Virus record (IMG/VR): IMGVR_UViG_3300049043_000112
Location: 124,001-188,000 of that record
Reading direction: 5' to 3' (one strand)
DNA: 64,000 nt
Shown: positions 16,350 to 36,495 of the stretch, one piece after another
Layout: each line of letters starts with the position of its first letter
Numbering within the stretch: position 1 is the stretch's first letter
The notes under the pieces: model-generated
Databases searched by the model: none
What the model was told of the DNA's origin: nothing
Seen by the model: the letters and a program-made list of their open reading frames with translations, nothing else
Program-made: the position numbers and the translations under genes

Positions 16350-16433
16350 TGCGAGTAGGGAGACTTGAACTCCCACGGGCATACGCCCAACAGATTTTAA
16401 GTCTGGTGTGTCTACCGATTCCACCATACTCGC
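16350..16433 (-). tRNA. tRNA-Leu(UAA)
   Basis: GCGAGTA/TACTCGC acceptor stem, TGGTGGAATCGGTAGACAC D region, anticodon loop CTTAAAA, long variable arm, GTTCAAGTC T loop; CCA not encoded. Confidence 0.93.
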
Positions 16434-16443
16434 TTGTGGGACC

Positions 16444-16472
16444 ATTATAACTCTTAGAGTCTTAATGGTCAA
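16444..16472 (-). promoter_or_regulatory. Sigma70-type promoter for tRNA-Leu, overlapping an inverted repeat
   Basis: TTGACC-N17-TATAAT on the minus strand; GACCATTA...TAATGGTC inverted repeat spans it. Confidence 0.8.
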
Positions 16473-16473
16473 G

Positions 16474-16546
16474 TGCTGGTTGCGAGGATCGAACTCGCCT
16501 CCCATCGATTATGAGTCGATTGCATTCGCCAGATTGCTAAACCAGC
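16474..16546 (-). tRNA. tRNA with CAU anticodon (non-initiator; probably Ile2/lysidine type, alternatively elongator Met)
   Basis: GCTGGTT/AACCAGC acceptor with paired G1-C72; anticodon arm ATCGA-CTCATAA-TCGAT with C29:G41 as in tRNA-Ile2; GTTCGATC T loop. Confidence 0.88.
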
Positions 16547-16575
16547 ATTCGCTATTCGCAAATAGAGAATAGCAA

Positions 16576-16667
16576 TAGGGACACCTGGATTCGAACCAGG
16601 ACCTCGCGGTAATCTGCCGCTAATACAAGGTATAAGCTTGCTGTTCTAACCGTTGAACTATGCCCCC
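16576..16667 (-). tRNA. tRNA with Ile(UAU) anticodon and a 24-nt variable region (92 nt)
   Basis: GGGGGCA/TGTCCCT acceptor, GTTC/GAAC D stem, GCAAG-CTTATAC-CTTGT anticodon arm, variable region ATTAGCGGCAGATTACCGCGAGGT, CCTGG-TTCGAAT-CCAGG T arm. Confidence 0.88.
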
Positions 16668-34188: not shown

Positions 34189-34825
34189 TTAGACCCACTC
34201 CAGAGCTTCGGCAACTGTTGGAAACTGTTCGGTAAACACCTTCTTACATTCCAGAGCAATGTCCATATGCTCTTTCTGAGTACCGTTTGCGGAACGAAGA
34301 TTGATGTAATGAATCCAGGAACGGCAAGAATCCTGTCATGTAAATGCGCGTAGGGGTCGCCAGAGGCAGTACAAACCTTGCACACTCCTTAGCAACTCCG
34401 TGGTCTAGAAGTTCCTTGTAGAGGCGCATAGAGTGTGCAAAATGCTCTTGAATCTTGCTCTGGAGACCCAGTTTCTCATACTCACCAATATCGTCAATCG
34501 AGTTCTGACGATTCTTAGTGTCCTGACGGCGAAGGTCAGGCACAGGAATATATTCACTCAACAGGGAAGAATCAGCATAACGCTGTGAAAACTCTTGGAA
34601 CGTGAAACTACGATGGCGCAGAATCTGTGCTGCAATACCACGGTTCGTTTCAATCTCAAGACTCATAGACGACTGCTCAAAAACAGACCAATGATTGTGC
34701 TTAATACAATAACGTAGCAGACCTGCATAGTTTTCAGAATCTTGATTTGCTGGATTAGAAACCCTAGCAATATACGCCATTGTTTGTTCTGCATCGGGAG
34801 TTACACTGATAAGTTTTACAGTCAT
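34189..34825 (-). CDS. thyX: Flavin-dependent thymidylate synthase ThyX (indel near 34330)
   Basis: [38 protein letters not shown]; the shifted frame continues [17 protein letters not shown]...EALEWV*. Confidence 0.93.
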
Positions 34826-35183: not shown

Positions 35184-35210
35184 AAAAAAAGGGGGGAATC
35201 AACCCCCCGA
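35184..35210 (-). terminator. Intrinsic terminator closing the riboswitch/DUF4278 unit
   Basis: GGGGGG-TTGATT-CCCCCC followed by T7 on the minus strand. Confidence 0.85.
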
Positions 35211-35212
35211 CT

Positions 35213-35296
35213 TTAATTGAATAAAAACTGAATATAAAGCGATAATAGCATAATTGCAACTGCACAACCTGCGGTAATTTGTAATATCGCAAACAT
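35213..35296 (-). CDS. 27-aa hydrophobic micropeptide
   Basis: MFAILQITAGCAVAIMLLSLYIQFLFN*; start overlaps the upstream stop (TGATG). Confidence 0.55.
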   Translation of the reverse strand: MFAILQITAGCAVAIMLLSLYIQFLFN

Positions 35297-35556
35297 CACT
35301 TTGCACCAACTAGTTGTGCTAATTGTGCTTGATGACGACGCTCTTCTTTTTGTTTTTGTTCTTTAATTAATTGAAGGAAGTTAAGTTTCTTCATTTCCCA
35401 CCTCCCTTGGATTTTTCCATTAGAGAGTTTGTTTCCATTTTCATCCACCCAGAACATTGCTCCGCGATAGATTTCTACGTGTGGTTGAATCTTGAACGTT
35501 TGATTTGGACGTTCAGTAGTGTCATATTCGACACCACGATATACGACTTTAGACAT
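35296..35556 (-). CDS. DUF4278-like small protein, possibly plus a separate basic peptide (MKKLNFLQ..., ATG at 35394)
   Basis: Two YRG(V/A) motifs (VVYRGVEY, EIYRGAMF); strong RBS AAGGAG. A second RBS-like GGAGGTGG before ATG 35394 suggests two genes joined by an indel. Confidence 0.7.
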   Translation of the reverse strand: MSKVVYRGVEYDTTERPNQTFKIQPHVEIYRGAMFWVDENGNKLSNGKIQGRWEMKKLNFLQLIKEQKQKEERRHQAQLAQLVGAK

Positions 35557-35588
35557 TAGGTTTTCTCCTTAATTTTGAGGCTAAAGAG

Positions 35589-35772
35589 CGTTCCTTCAGT
35601 CGGCTTTTGCGTCTAATGGAAAGTTATCCCACCTACAAGTTTTTGGCGAAACATCTTTGATTTGTTGTACGAGTTCTTTTTTAACTTCCAAAGGAAGATT
35701 TTAAGAACCAATATTTGAAATCAAGACATTTGCTTGAAAACAAGTTAATAGCAGAGTTTCCATAGATGAACG
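35589..35772 (-). promoter_or_regulatory. Glutamine-riboswitch-like aptamer 2 (glnA / Downstream-peptide family) with expanded P2
   Basis: CGTTCA-TCTATGGAAA ... TTTCCATTAGA-CGCAAAAGCCGACTGAAG-GAACG; P1 CGTTC/GAACG; directly upstream of the DUF4278-like RBS. Confidence 0.75.
35596..35763 (-). CDS. Small two-Cys ORF nested in aptamer 2 (56 codons; in-frame TAA at codon 21)
   Basis: METLLLTCFQANVLISNIGS*NLPLEVKKELVQQIKDVSPKTCRWDNFPLDAKAD*. Confidence 0.6.
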
Positions 35773-35776
35773 ATTC

Positions 35777-36033
35777 CGTTCCGAGTCGGCTTACTTCCGT
35801 CCTATTGAATTGTTCAGCACTTAAGTCTCACAACATCCTTTCGGAGTTCTAATAGCAATCGGTCTTCTCTTCTTTGGTCTACTACATCGTCGTTTTTAAC
35901 GATGTCCATTAGTTCCCAAGCTGCACCACAACTTATCGTCACTTGAGTATCAGATTTGGTAAGTTGTGGAGTAGAGATAGAAAGAAGTGGAACCCATGCT
36001 AAAAGCAAAAGTGCTTTAGTCATAGGATGAACG
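35777..36033 (-). promoter_or_regulatory. Glutamine-riboswitch-like aptamer 1 with expanded P2
   Basis: CGTTCA-TCCTAT ... ATAGGA-CGGAAGTAAG-CCGACTCG-GAACG; GGAAGTAA is the E-loop-like segment of glnA-type aptamers. Confidence 0.75.
35814..36023 (-). CDS. 69-aa ORF nested in aptamer 1 (signal-peptide-like N-terminus, two Cys)
   Basis: MTKALLLLAWVPLLSIS...SCGAAWELMDIV...LELRKDVVRLKC*. Confidence 0.7.
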   Translation of the reverse strand: MTKALLLLAWVPLLSISTPQLTKSDTQVTISCGAAWELMDIVKNDDVVDQRREDRLLLELRKDVVRLKC

Positions 36034-36043
36034 TTAGAGGGAT

Positions 36044-36097
36044 ATTATACCTCTATTCATTGATATTTAGGGAGTTTTGTGTGTATTTCCTGATACA
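36044..36097 (-). promoter_or_regulatory. Composite promoter: NtcA box, late CTAAATA and -10 TATAAT
   Basis: TGTA-N8-TACA at 36082-36097; CTAAATA at 36070-36064; TATAAT at 36049-36044, 10 nt upstream of aptamer 1. Confidence 0.7.
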
Positions 36098-36156
36098 ATT
36101 TTAAAAACCTTCACACAGGAAAATTTTGCCGGGAAATTTTCCGCCGATTATGGAAA

Positions 36157-36495
36157 TTACTTCCGCTTTTTCCTTTCAGGTGCTTTGTATCCCCAGGTCT
36201 TTGGATTATAACGCCCATATCCAAAGTCGATACTCTTCAAATTTTCACGAAACTTATCCCAATACATATCAAACAATTTAATTCTAGAGCCTCTAGTTAA
36301 ATCGAAACAAAGTTTTTCATCAACCATATACTTGACAATATAAGCATCATTAGGTGCTTCTTTGGTACAGACATCAGCATACGAACCATTCTCAATCATA
36401 ATTTCACAACCGTAACGTGACTTACAGGTTTCTTTTTCTGCTGATGTCCAATAATCCATATCTGTTTCCTTTACTTCATCAACAACTGAACTCAC
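36157..36495 (-). CDS. Hypothetical protein
   Basis: ORF with a GTG start overlapping the upstream stop (GTGA); FDMYWDKF...GYGRYNPKTWGY. Confidence 0.75.
   Translation of the reverse strand: MSSVVDEVKETDMDYWTSAEKETCKSRYGCEIMIENGSYADVCTKEAPNDAYIVKYMVDEKLCFDLTRGSRIKLFDMYWDKFRENLKSIDFGYGRYNPKTWGYKAPERKKRK

What the first reader, a model, noticed from the sequence alone, without database searches (positions are those of the whole stretch)
36044..36097. Layered nitrogen sensing: an NtcA box sits in the promoter that feeds the riboswitch transcript
A perfect TGTA-N8-TACA palindrome (36082-36097) lies 33 nt upstream of a TATAAT -10 box. That is one helical turn more than the roughly 22-nt spacing of class II NtcA-activated promoters. 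A phage late motif CTAAATA lies between them, and the TATAAT sits in the loop of a TAGAGG/CCTCTA inverted repeat. NtcA senses 2-oxoglutarate in cyanobacteria, so the phage could read both host 2-OG (DNA level) and glutamine (RNA level) to control a terminator-bounded unit of 4-5 tiny proteins (36023 to 35213). The box also supports a cyanobacterial host.
Basis: partly seen in the sequence, partly recalled or inferred. Interest (0 to 1): 0.65.

Follow-up and report, generated by a model that had tools for sequence, protein, structure and literature searches.

The report
NtcA-type box heading phage glutamine-riboswitch cassette
The palindrome is a real, strongly conserved NtcA-type operator at the front edge of a mobile cyanophage cassette (promoter, glutamine riboswitches, small IF17-like protein), copying a design known from host gif genes, but it is not placed like an NtcA activator site.

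Summary
TGTA-N8-TACA lies at 36082-36097, and TATAAT (36049-36044) lies 33 nt after TAC. CTAAATA sits between them, and TATAAT is in the loop of a hairpin. Simple counting shows no excess of such boxes in the window or the genome. Comparison shows it is functional. At the same locus in related phage contigs, GTA and TACA are nearly invariant while the N8 varies. Among IMG/VR contigs with a compact glutamine aptamer, 102 of 106 distinct upstream regions carry GTA-N8-TAC, against 1 of 103 downstream controls. These lie behind at least 27 unrelated contexts. The box's fixed partner is the TAAATA/TATATA element exactly 13 nt downstream. Spacing to TATAAT varies from 31 to 33 nt. No geometry in the window matches a class II NtcA-activated promoter (box centre -52.5 or -32.5, not -41.5). 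Metatranscriptome contigs cover the unit up to about 36037 and not upstream, which fits a start just after TATAAT. Host gif genes already combine NtcA repression with a glutamine riboswitch. The best reading is a phage version of that circuit, probably negative control by host NtcA. Binding and its sign are untested.

The parts
36082..36097 (-). NtcA-type palindrome TGTA-N8-TACA (core GTA-N8-TAC at 36083-36096), forming the 5' edge of the cassette
   Evidence: Sequence. Half-sites are near-invariant and the N8 is free in 22 distinct orthologous intergenic variants. 102 of 106 viral aptamer loci carry such a box. As RNA it folds to only -1.7 kcal/mol.
36064..36070 (-). CTAAATA (TAAATA at 36069-36064): a T4-type late-promoter-like or A/T-rich -10-like element that always lies 13 nt after TAC
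   Evidence: The 13-nt spacing holds in all orthologues, in DSL-LC02 and in L061. NTAAATA is enriched in non-ORF space of the genome, 68 of 217 sites against a 15.5% non-ORF fraction.
36069..36074 (-). Position of the -35 hexamer seen in relatives (TTGACT, TTGCTA, TTGATA). It is degenerate here (CTCCCT) and lies 19 nt from TATAAT.
   Evidence: Alignment. The promoter scan finds no sigma-70 match here.
36044..36049 (-). TATAAT -10 box, invariant in the long form of the cassette
   Evidence: Depth of RNA-library contigs stops at about 36037, 7 nt downstream of it.
36035..36055 (-). Hairpin with TAGAGG / CCTCTA arms and TATAAT in the loop
   Evidence: 4 of 5 stem pairs show compensatory double changes across 31 sequences. 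Fold energy is -6.3 kcal/mol, z -2.46.
36025..36033 (-). 5' strand (CGTTCATCC) of glutamine aptamer 1. The ATG of the nested 69-aa ORF follows at 36023-36021.
   Evidence: The homologous compact aptamers in L059 and L028 pass the Rfam RF01739 gathering score at this position.
35777..35805 (-). 3' core of aptamer 1 (ATAGG ACGGAAGTAAGCC GACTCGGAACG)
   Evidence: A 97% match to the intergenic region of P-RSM6. An RNA contig joint from 35808 to 36022 marks relatives that lack the 213-nt insert.
35814..36023 (-). 69-aa ORF nested between the two halves of aptamer 1
   Evidence: It is intact at 67-68 aa in about 17 distinct relatives.
35588..35772 (-). Aptamer 2, split into a 5' strand (35772-35764) and a 3' core (35613-35588). 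The nested ORF starts at 35763 and is frameshifted in this window.
   Evidence: Relatives keep a 50-51-aa ORF that ends in the aptamer core.
35296..35556 (-). Downstream peptide gene, weakly DUF4278/IF17-like. It is followed by a 28-aa hydrophobic ORF at 35213-35299.
   Evidence: Pfam PF14105 scores 17.9-20.4 bits, below the 25.3 cut-off, in the window, S-SRM01 and DSL-LC02.
35191..35208 (-). Intrinsic terminator that closes the unit
   Evidence: GGGGGG..CCCCCC followed by a T run.
36118..36146 (-). A/T-rich hairpin plus T run after the upstream 117-aa gene. It is a clear terminator in relatives and weak here.
   Evidence: for example a CCTGGAAAAA / TTTTTCCAGG stem followed by a T run. One search gives -6.9 kcal/mol, z -0.18, in the window.

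Best explanation
The palindrome is a functional operator for a dimeric CRP-family regulator, most probably the host's 2-oxoglutarate sensor NtcA. It forms the 5' edge of a self-contained cassette that moves among cyanomyoviruses. The cassette consists of the box, then 13 nt, then a TAAATA/TATATA element. In the long form found here a covarying hairpin with TATAAT in its loop comes next. Then follow one or two glutamine aptamers, a small DUF4278/IF17-like protein gene and a terminator. Shown: the box, its conservation, its near-obligate link to phage glutamine aptamers, its fixed 13-nt partner, its uniqueness in this genome, and an RNA 5' boundary near 36037. Inferred: NtcA binds when 2-OG is high (nitrogen-poor) and lowers transcription. 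It would do this by occupying the -35 side of the TAAATA promoter (centre -32.5), and the alpha-CTD/UP region just upstream of the TATAAT promoter (centre -52.5). The riboswitch allows translation only when glutamine is high. The unit would then be made in nitrogen-rich infected cells, the same coherent logic as host gifA/gifB.
For: Sequence and spacing. Orthologous loci: 33 of 40 distinct intergenic variants have an exact GTA-N8-TAC, two more have one mismatch, and at least 12 different N8 sequences occur. In the 22-sequence alignment GTA and TACA are near-invariant while the spacer is not. Census: 102 of 106 distinct regions upstream of viral glutamine aptamers carry the box, against 1 of 103 downstream and 0 when the sequence is reversed. 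The gap to the aptamer is bimodal at 24-25 and 44-48 nt. Similarity starts at the box behind at least 27 unrelated contexts. The full module (box, N12, TAWATW) occurs twice in 236 kb against 0.03 expected, and the other copy is antisense inside a structural gene. No CRP-type HTH is encoded by the phage, and the one cNMP-domain hit is below cut-off. Host parallel: 58 genome loci, nearly all cyanobacterial, have TGTA-N8-TAC 15-45 nt before the aptamer, mostly 15-22 nt. The literature reports that NtcA represses gifA and gifB with sites centred at -30.5, -7.5 and -28.5, that gifB carries the glutamine riboswitch, and that DUF4278 marks IF17 (PMC6212724, PMC6316151). Sites of NtcA-repressed genes range from -69 to +83 with a cluster near -30, while 71% of activated sites lie at -41 to -44 (PMC5714215). 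Compact aptamers in relatives pass Rfam RF01739. RNA-library contigs cover 35190-36037 and then drop to about zero.
Against: No binding data exist. The window and genome show no excess of NtcA boxes. RNA contigs put the main 5' boundary after TATAAT, so here the box is centred at -52.5. That position does not overlap the core promoter, so simple steric repression is not assured. In this window the -35 is degenerate (CTCCCT), which would suit dependence on an activator. A 180-nt sister family has the box 21 nt before TATATA, which is activator-like at -40.5. S-SRM01 has it 14 nt before GATAAT. The geometry therefore varies between lineages. The DUF4278 assignment is below the Pfam cut-off. The marine phage P-RSM6 has the aptamers without a box.
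Confidence: 0.55

Rival explanations
1. One reading: NtcA acts as an activator from a site one helical turn upstream of the class II position (centre -52.5). It would drive the -35-less TATAAT promoter when 2-OG is high, so the unit needs both high 2-OG and high glutamine.
For: The box is NtcA-like and conserved. In this window the -35 is degenerate, so an activator could be needed. The RNA boundary fits the TATAAT start. NtcA activation from sites upstream of -41.5 has been reported (PMC5714215, PMC6316151). The 180-nt sister family has a box at -40.5 relative to TATATA. Sullivan 2010 proposed NtcA-driven cyanophage genes (PMC3037559).
Against: Box-to-TATAAT spacing drifts between 31 and 33 nt, while box-to-TAAATA spacing is fixed at 13 nt. 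Most relatives have a good -35 (TTGACT with a 17-18 nt spacer) and would not need an activator. In short-form cassettes (22 distinct sequences, plus isolate DSL-LC02) no TATAAT exists and the box is centred at -32.5. 71% of activating sites lie at -41 to -44 (PMC5714215). As I recall, E. coli CRP does not activate from about -51.5; I did not check this here. Requiring high 2-OG and high glutamine together is an incoherent demand, and host gif genes use the opposite sign.
Confidence: 0.22
2. The palindrome is the operator of another dimeric regulator, phage-encoded or host-encoded, that happens to share the TGTA-N8-TACA pattern. The control would then be unrelated to 2-OG.
For: No binding test has been done. 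Identity rests only on consensus and association. The box is unique to this cassette in the genome, as a dedicated regulator's site would be.
Against: The phage encodes no CRP-type HTH. The cassette occurs in many different cyanophage backbones, so the regulator must be common to all of them, as host NtcA is. The same motif precedes host aptamers in diverse cyanobacteria, where NtcA control has been shown experimentally (PMC6212724, PMC6316151).
Confidence: 0.15
3. The box has no specific regulatory role. It would be a chance palindrome, part of an UP-like A/T tract, or an RNA or terminator hairpin.
For: Box counts are at chance level in the window and genome. The surrounding DNA is A/T-rich. 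In S-SRM01 and the 180-nt family the GTA-N8-TAC lies in one arm of a larger inverted repeat.
Against: The association is 102 of 106 against 1 of 103. The half-sites are invariant with a free spacer and show no covariation. The RNA stem is only -1.7 kcal/mol.
Confidence: 0.04

Closest known systems
Host gifB (IF17) and gifA control in cyanobacteria: an NtcA-repressed promoter plus a type 1 glutamine riboswitch (Klahn 2018, PMC6212724; Bolay 2018, PMC6316151)
   Same: A GTA-N8-TAC box lies in the promoter, a glnA-type glutamine aptamer lies in the leader, and a small DUF4278-like ORF lies downstream. Two nitrogen signals, 2-OG and glutamine, are read at the DNA and RNA levels.
   Different: In host loci found here the box lies 15-22 nt before the aptamer, over the -10 and the start site. 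In the phage it lies 24-25 or 44-49 nt before the aptamer and upstream of the -10. The phage has tandem aptamers, ORFs nested inside them, a late-promoter-like element and a hairpin around TATAAT. The phage protein scores below the DUF4278 cut-off.
Predicted NtcA promoters in marine T4-like cyanophages (Sullivan 2010, PMC3037559)
   Same: GTA-N8-TAC boxes occur in cyanophage intergenic DNA. The same idea applies: the phage exploits host 2-OG/NtcA signalling.
   Different: Those were consensus predictions (1-16 per genome) assumed to be activating and not tied to a riboswitch. Here one box is supported by conservation and by a near-obligate link to the glutamine aptamer, and activation geometry is not met.
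Canonical class II NtcA-activated promoters (glnA, amt1, nir; box centred at -41.5)
   Same: The same palindrome, and a weak or absent -35 in this window.
   Different: The spacing is 33 nt (or 13 nt) instead of about 22 nt to the -10. Most relatives have a good -35.
Glutamine riboswitches in cyanophages (Rfam RF01739 glnA RNA; RF01704 Downstream-peptide)
   Same: The same aptamer class, in tandem, followed by a short peptide gene.
   Different: Both aptamers in the window are split by inserts of about 210 and 150 nt that hold ORFs, so Rfam does not detect them.

Membership tests
NtcA binding site | Palindrome GTA-N8-TAC, extended to TGTA-N8-TACA | tested here: met
   Exact match at 36082-36097.
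NtcA binding site | Half-sites conserved and spacer free among orthologues, the signature of a protein-recognised dyad | tested here: met
   GTA, TAC and the following A are fixed, and at least 12 N8 variants occur at the orthologous locus. In one search the rows were selected for having the box. Unselected figures are 33 of 40 and 102 of 106.
NtcA binding site | 2-OG-stimulated binding of NtcA in vitro or in vivo | not testable with these tools
   This needs EMSA, footprinting or ChIP.
Class II NtcA-activated promoter | Box centred near -41.5, that is about 22 nt (20-24) between TAC and a TAN3T -10 | tested here: not met
   33 nt to TATAAT and 13 nt to TAAATA. No TAN3T lies 18-32 nt after TAC; the first is TATAAT at 33.
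Class II NtcA-activated promoter | No functional -35 hexamer | tested here: inconclusive
   The window has CTCCCT. Most relatives have TTGACT, TTGCTA or TTGATA 16-18 nt before TATAAT.
gif-type unit (NtcA-repressed promoter + glutamine riboswitch + IF17-like ORF) | NtcA box overlapping core promoter elements (about -30 to -7) | tested here: inconclusive
   The box is centred at -32.5 if TAAATA is the -10, which is the only option in short-form cassettes. It is centred at -52.5 relative to the TATAAT start that the RNA contigs favour.
gif-type unit (NtcA-repressed promoter + glutamine riboswitch + IF17-like ORF) | Glutamine aptamer (RF01739) in the leader | tested here: inconclusive
   The window gives no Rfam hit because both aptamers are split. 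The homologous compact aptamers in L059 (42 bits) and L028 (36.5 bits) pass the cut-off of 35. The aptamer strands are recognisable in the window.
gif-type unit (NtcA-repressed promoter + glutamine riboswitch + IF17-like ORF) | Downstream ORF with DUF4278 (PF14105) | tested here: inconclusive
   Scores are 17.9-20.4 bits against a cut-off of 25.3. Inhibition of glutamine synthetase was not tested.
T4-type late promoter | TATAAATA-like motif placed before genes | tested here: met
   CTAAATA at 36070-36064. NTAAATA is enriched in non-ORF space, typically after terminators and before ATG codons.
T4-type late promoter | Transcripts starting a few nt after the motif late in infection | tested here: inconclusive
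   RNA contig depth is near zero at 36038-36074. However, contigs cannot show starts and there is no time course.

The most novel reading that the evidence does not exclude
The box and the two stacked promoter elements (TAAATA 13 nt away, TATAAT in a covarying hairpin) form a switch. Through it host NtcA would choose which 5' end the riboswitch RNA receives, or would activate from -52.5. The phage unit would then be expressed only in a metabolic state peculiar to infected cells, with 2-OG and glutamine high together. This logic would be new and not found in host gif genes.
Probability: 0.15. Interest if true: 0.75.

Novelty: new variant of a known kind. Interest (0 to 1): 0.55.

Why it matters
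Glutamine riboswitches in cyanophages and predicted NtcA boxes in cyanophages have each been noted before, but separately. No paper in the searchable library links them. Here the two prove to be one conserved, mobile unit. That gives a concrete, easily testable case of a virus reading host nitrogen status at two levels to time small IF17-like proteins that may act on glutamine synthetase. The work also corrects the mechanistic expectation: the geometry fits repressor-like or non-canonical control, not class II activation. Isolates are available for the test: DSL-LC02 carries the short form, and S-SRM01 carries a sister form.

Tried and rejected
1. Motif counting as evidence. Counts in the window and genome are at chance level, so frequency says nothing either way.
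2. Rfam on the window, at gathering and E-value thresholds. No glutamine riboswitch hit appears because the aptamers are split, so I used relatives instead.
3. A class II -10 about 22 nt after TAC. None exists in the window. In short-form cassettes TA(A)CGT(T) falls at N22, but a start there would cut off the aptamer's first strand, so I treated it as coincidental.
4. The box as a general phage promoter element. Rejected: no other late-type or early-type site in the genome has it.
5. The box as an RNA hairpin or terminator. Rejected: -1.7 kcal/mol and no covariation.
6. The repeated AAATTTCC words upstream. These are the arms of the terminator hairpin of the upstream gene, not a second operator.
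7. A phage-encoded CRP-like regulator. None was found.
8. The Syn9 transcription-start paper was not held in the library.
9. S-SRM01 as a direct orthologue of the box. Its aligned GTA..TAC has an N9 spacer. A second GTA-N8-TAC lies 14 nt before GATAAT inside a larger inverted repeat, which is a different architecture.
10. The thyX comparison with S-SRM01 was uninformative.
The large protein searches, the structure prediction tools and complex prediction were not needed and were not used.

Full report
WHAT IS THERE. The window is bases 124001-188000 of a 236-kb IMG/VR virus. Its nearest isolate is the freshwater Synechococcus myovirus S-SRM01, family Kyanoviridae. Genes in this region run on the - strand. 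Read on that strand, the 117-aa gene at 36510-36157 is followed by a weak A/T-rich hairpin with a T run. Then come TGTATCAGGAAATACA (36097-36082), 12 nt, CTAAATA (36070-36064), and the hairpin TAGAGG-TATAATATC-CCTCTA (36055-36035) with TATAAT at 36049-36044. Two nt further the sequence CGTTCATCC (36033-36025) begins.

CHANCE. GTA-N8-TAC occurs 18 times in the window against 15.8 expected, and the 16-mer pattern 4 times against 2.6. The genome has 59 sites, 10 of them in the 15.5% of sequence outside long ORFs. Counting gives no support, so the case rests on comparison.

CONSERVATION AT THE SAME LOCUS. Eighty IMG/VR loci encode the upstream 117-aa protein at 74-85% identity. Together with the window and S-SRM01 they give 40 distinct downstream intergenic sequences. 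Of these, 33 contain an exact GTA-N8-TAC and two more have a single mismatch. In the 22 distinct sequences built like the window, GTA and TACA are near-invariant. The N8 takes many forms, including TCAGGAAA, TCGCATTA, ACATTTTA, TTTTATTT, ACAAATAT and ACGAATGT. That is the signature of a dyad read by a protein dimer. As RNA the dyad folds to only -1.7 kcal/mol.

ASSOCIATION WITH THE RIBOSWITCH. Rfam finds no glutamine riboswitch in the window. The sequence shows two aptamers, each split by an insert. Their 5' strands are at 36033 and 35772, and their 3' cores are at 35805-35777 and 35613-35588. In relatives without the first insert, the aptamer at exactly this position passes the RF01739 cut-off: L059 scores 42 bits and L028 scores 36.5 bits, against a cut-off of 35.

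I then collected viral contigs carrying a compact aptamer, regardless of neighbourhood. The scan stopped at 120 loci. Of 106 distinct upstream 110-mers, 102 carry GTA-N8-TAC. The downstream control gives 1 of 103, and the reversed sequence gives 0. The distance from TAC to the aptamer has two modes. In the short form it is 24-25 nt: box, 13 nt, TAAATA/TATATA, about 5 nt, aptamer. In the long form it is 44-48 nt, which adds the hairpin with TATAAT. The window belongs to the long form, at 49 nt. The sequence upstream of the box falls into at least 27 unrelated groups. These include ends of different genes, terminators and a tRNA. The box is therefore the 5' edge of a cassette that has moved between phage backbones.

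Within this genome the full module (box, N12, TAWATW) occurs twice against 0.03 expected. The second copy is antisense inside a large structural gene. NTAAATA motifs are enriched in non-ORF space, as T4-type late promoters are, and none of the others has the box. The box is therefore not a general promoter part.

GEOMETRY. The distance from TAC to TAAATA/TATATA is 13 nt in every orthologue. The same holds in isolate DSL-LC02, where the aptamer follows directly and no TATAAT exists, and in L061. The distance from TAC to TATAAT varies from 31 to 33 nt. Most relatives have a good -35 (TTGACT, TTGCTA or TTGATA) 16-18 nt before TATAAT. In the window this hexamer is CTCCCT. If TAAATA serves as a -10, the box is centred at -32.5. 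Relative to TATAAT it is centred at -52.5. No TAN3T lies 20-24 nt after TAC, so the class II activator arrangement (-41.5) is not met. Two sister architectures differ. A 180-nt family has GTA-N8-TAC 21 nt before TATATA (-40.5). S-SRM01 has it 14 nt before GATAAT. In both, the box lies inside a longer inverted repeat.

THE HAIRPIN. Across 31 sequences, 4 of the 5 stem pairs around TATAAT show compensatory double changes. The structure, and not only the -10 hexamer, is therefore under selection. I cannot say at which level, RNA or DNA, it acts.

RNA EVIDENCE. Three aquatic metatranscriptome runs were laid as contigs at 85% likeness or more. They give summed depths of tens to thousands from about 35190 to 36037. 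Depth is 8.9, 1.1 and 0 in the 36038-36074 bin, and 0 in all three from 36075 to 36185; only one run shows trace depth (1-5) in the last two bins, 36186-36250. The boundary lies 7 nt after TATAAT and 2-4 nt before the aptamer. It fits a sigma-70-type start there and a unit ending at the terminator at 35208-35191. There are caveats. Contigs cannot show true ends. The contigs come from relatives. The upstream gene may be too divergent to be laid. The silent upstream stretch does argue against plain DNA carry-over.

WHO BINDS. The phage encodes no CRP-type HTH, and its one cNMP-domain hit is below cut-off. In cellular genomes the pattern TGTA-N8-TAC, 15-45 nt, aptamer finds 58 loci. Nearly all are cyanobacteria of many orders, mostly with the box 15-22 nt before the aptamer. 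This matches the published gifB design. NtcA represses gifA and gifB, with sites centred at -30.5 and -7.5, and at -28.5 in Anabaena. gifB also carries the glutamine riboswitch, and DUF4278 marks IF17 (PMC6212724, PMC6316151). In Synechocystis 71% of activating sites lie at -41 to -44, while repressing sites range from -69 to +83 with a cluster near -30 (PMC5714215). The phage's downstream peptide hits DUF4278 only weakly, at 17.9-20.4 bits against a cut-off of 25.3.

MECHANISM. The most likely reading is that host NtcA binds the box when 2-OG is high and lowers transcription of the cassette. The aptamers gate translation on glutamine, so the small proteins are made when the infected cell is nitrogen-rich, as for host IF17. 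Shown: the box, its conservation, its linkage to the aptamer, its spacing and the RNA boundary. Inferred: the identity of the protein and the sign of control. In this window the -35 is lost, and the RNA boundary points to TATAAT, which places the box at -52.5 rather than over the core promoter.

NOVELTY. Two-level 2-OG/glutamine control is established for host gif genes. NtcA boxes in cyanophages were predicted in 2010 (PMC3037559). Cyanophage glutamine riboswitches are listed in several genome papers (PMC9964418, PMC9602691). I found no paper joining the two in phages. The phage cassette is a variant of the host design, with the box moved upstream of the -10 and with added promoter and hairpin elements.

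Noticed in passing
window 36023-35814 and 35763-35588 (- strand); relatives L006-L085: Both glutamine aptamers are split, and each holds a conserved ORF between its halves. The first is a 68-69-aa ORF with a signal-peptide-like N-terminus. The second is 50-51 aa; its ATG lies in the aptamer's 5' strand (CGTTCATCT-ATG) and its last codons are the aptamer's 3' core (GAC GCA AAA GCC GAC TGA). Translation and aptamer folding should compete. In this window the second ORF is broken by a frameshift, leaving 20 aa plus a 31-aa frame at 35691-35596. P-RSM6 and DSL-LC02 have the same nested ORF.
   Followed up: partly
window 36035-36055: The hairpin around the TATAAT box keeps pairing through compensatory changes, 4 of 5 pairs across 31 sequences. 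RNA contigs nonetheless seem to start downstream of it. The level at which it acts (late transcripts from CTAAATA, processing, or DNA) is unexplained.
   Followed up: partly
L037-L041 (IMG/VR relatives), intergenic region after the 117-aa gene: In one lineage the box has decayed to ATATTGTATTATAT, the first aptamer is absent, and the remaining aptamer 5' strand reads CATTCATC. This may be a joint loss of operator and riboswitch.
   Followed up: no
L116 (contig labelled Bacteroidota MAG) 208-292: This contig carries the phage-type long cassette: box, N13, TATATA, then the AGGTC-TATAAT-GACCT hairpin and the aptamer. It is probably a cyanophage contig binned into a bacterial MAG.
   Followed up: no
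window 34244-34825 (- strand) and 34189-34266: The ThyX-like ORF has the RHR...SQRY motif but ends in an atypical tail after TRIYMTG. A short ORF in another frame follows. This may be a frameshift or an assembly error. The comparison with S-SRM01 thyX was uninformative.
   Followed up: partly
G000:C1:117122-117160 (outside the window): A further CGTTCATCC word is directly followed by GTATCACCTCGTAC, with no aptamer core within 400 nt. Its meaning is unknown.
   Followed up: no
window 16350-16667 (- strand): A cluster of three tRNA genes, two of them with long variable arms.
   Followed up: no
L086 (P-RSM6) 620-700: The marine Prochlorococcus phage has the tandem aptamers behind a TTGCAT-17 nt-TATCAT promoter with no GTA-N8-TAC. 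The box is therefore not universal among phage glutamine riboswitches.
   Followed up: partly
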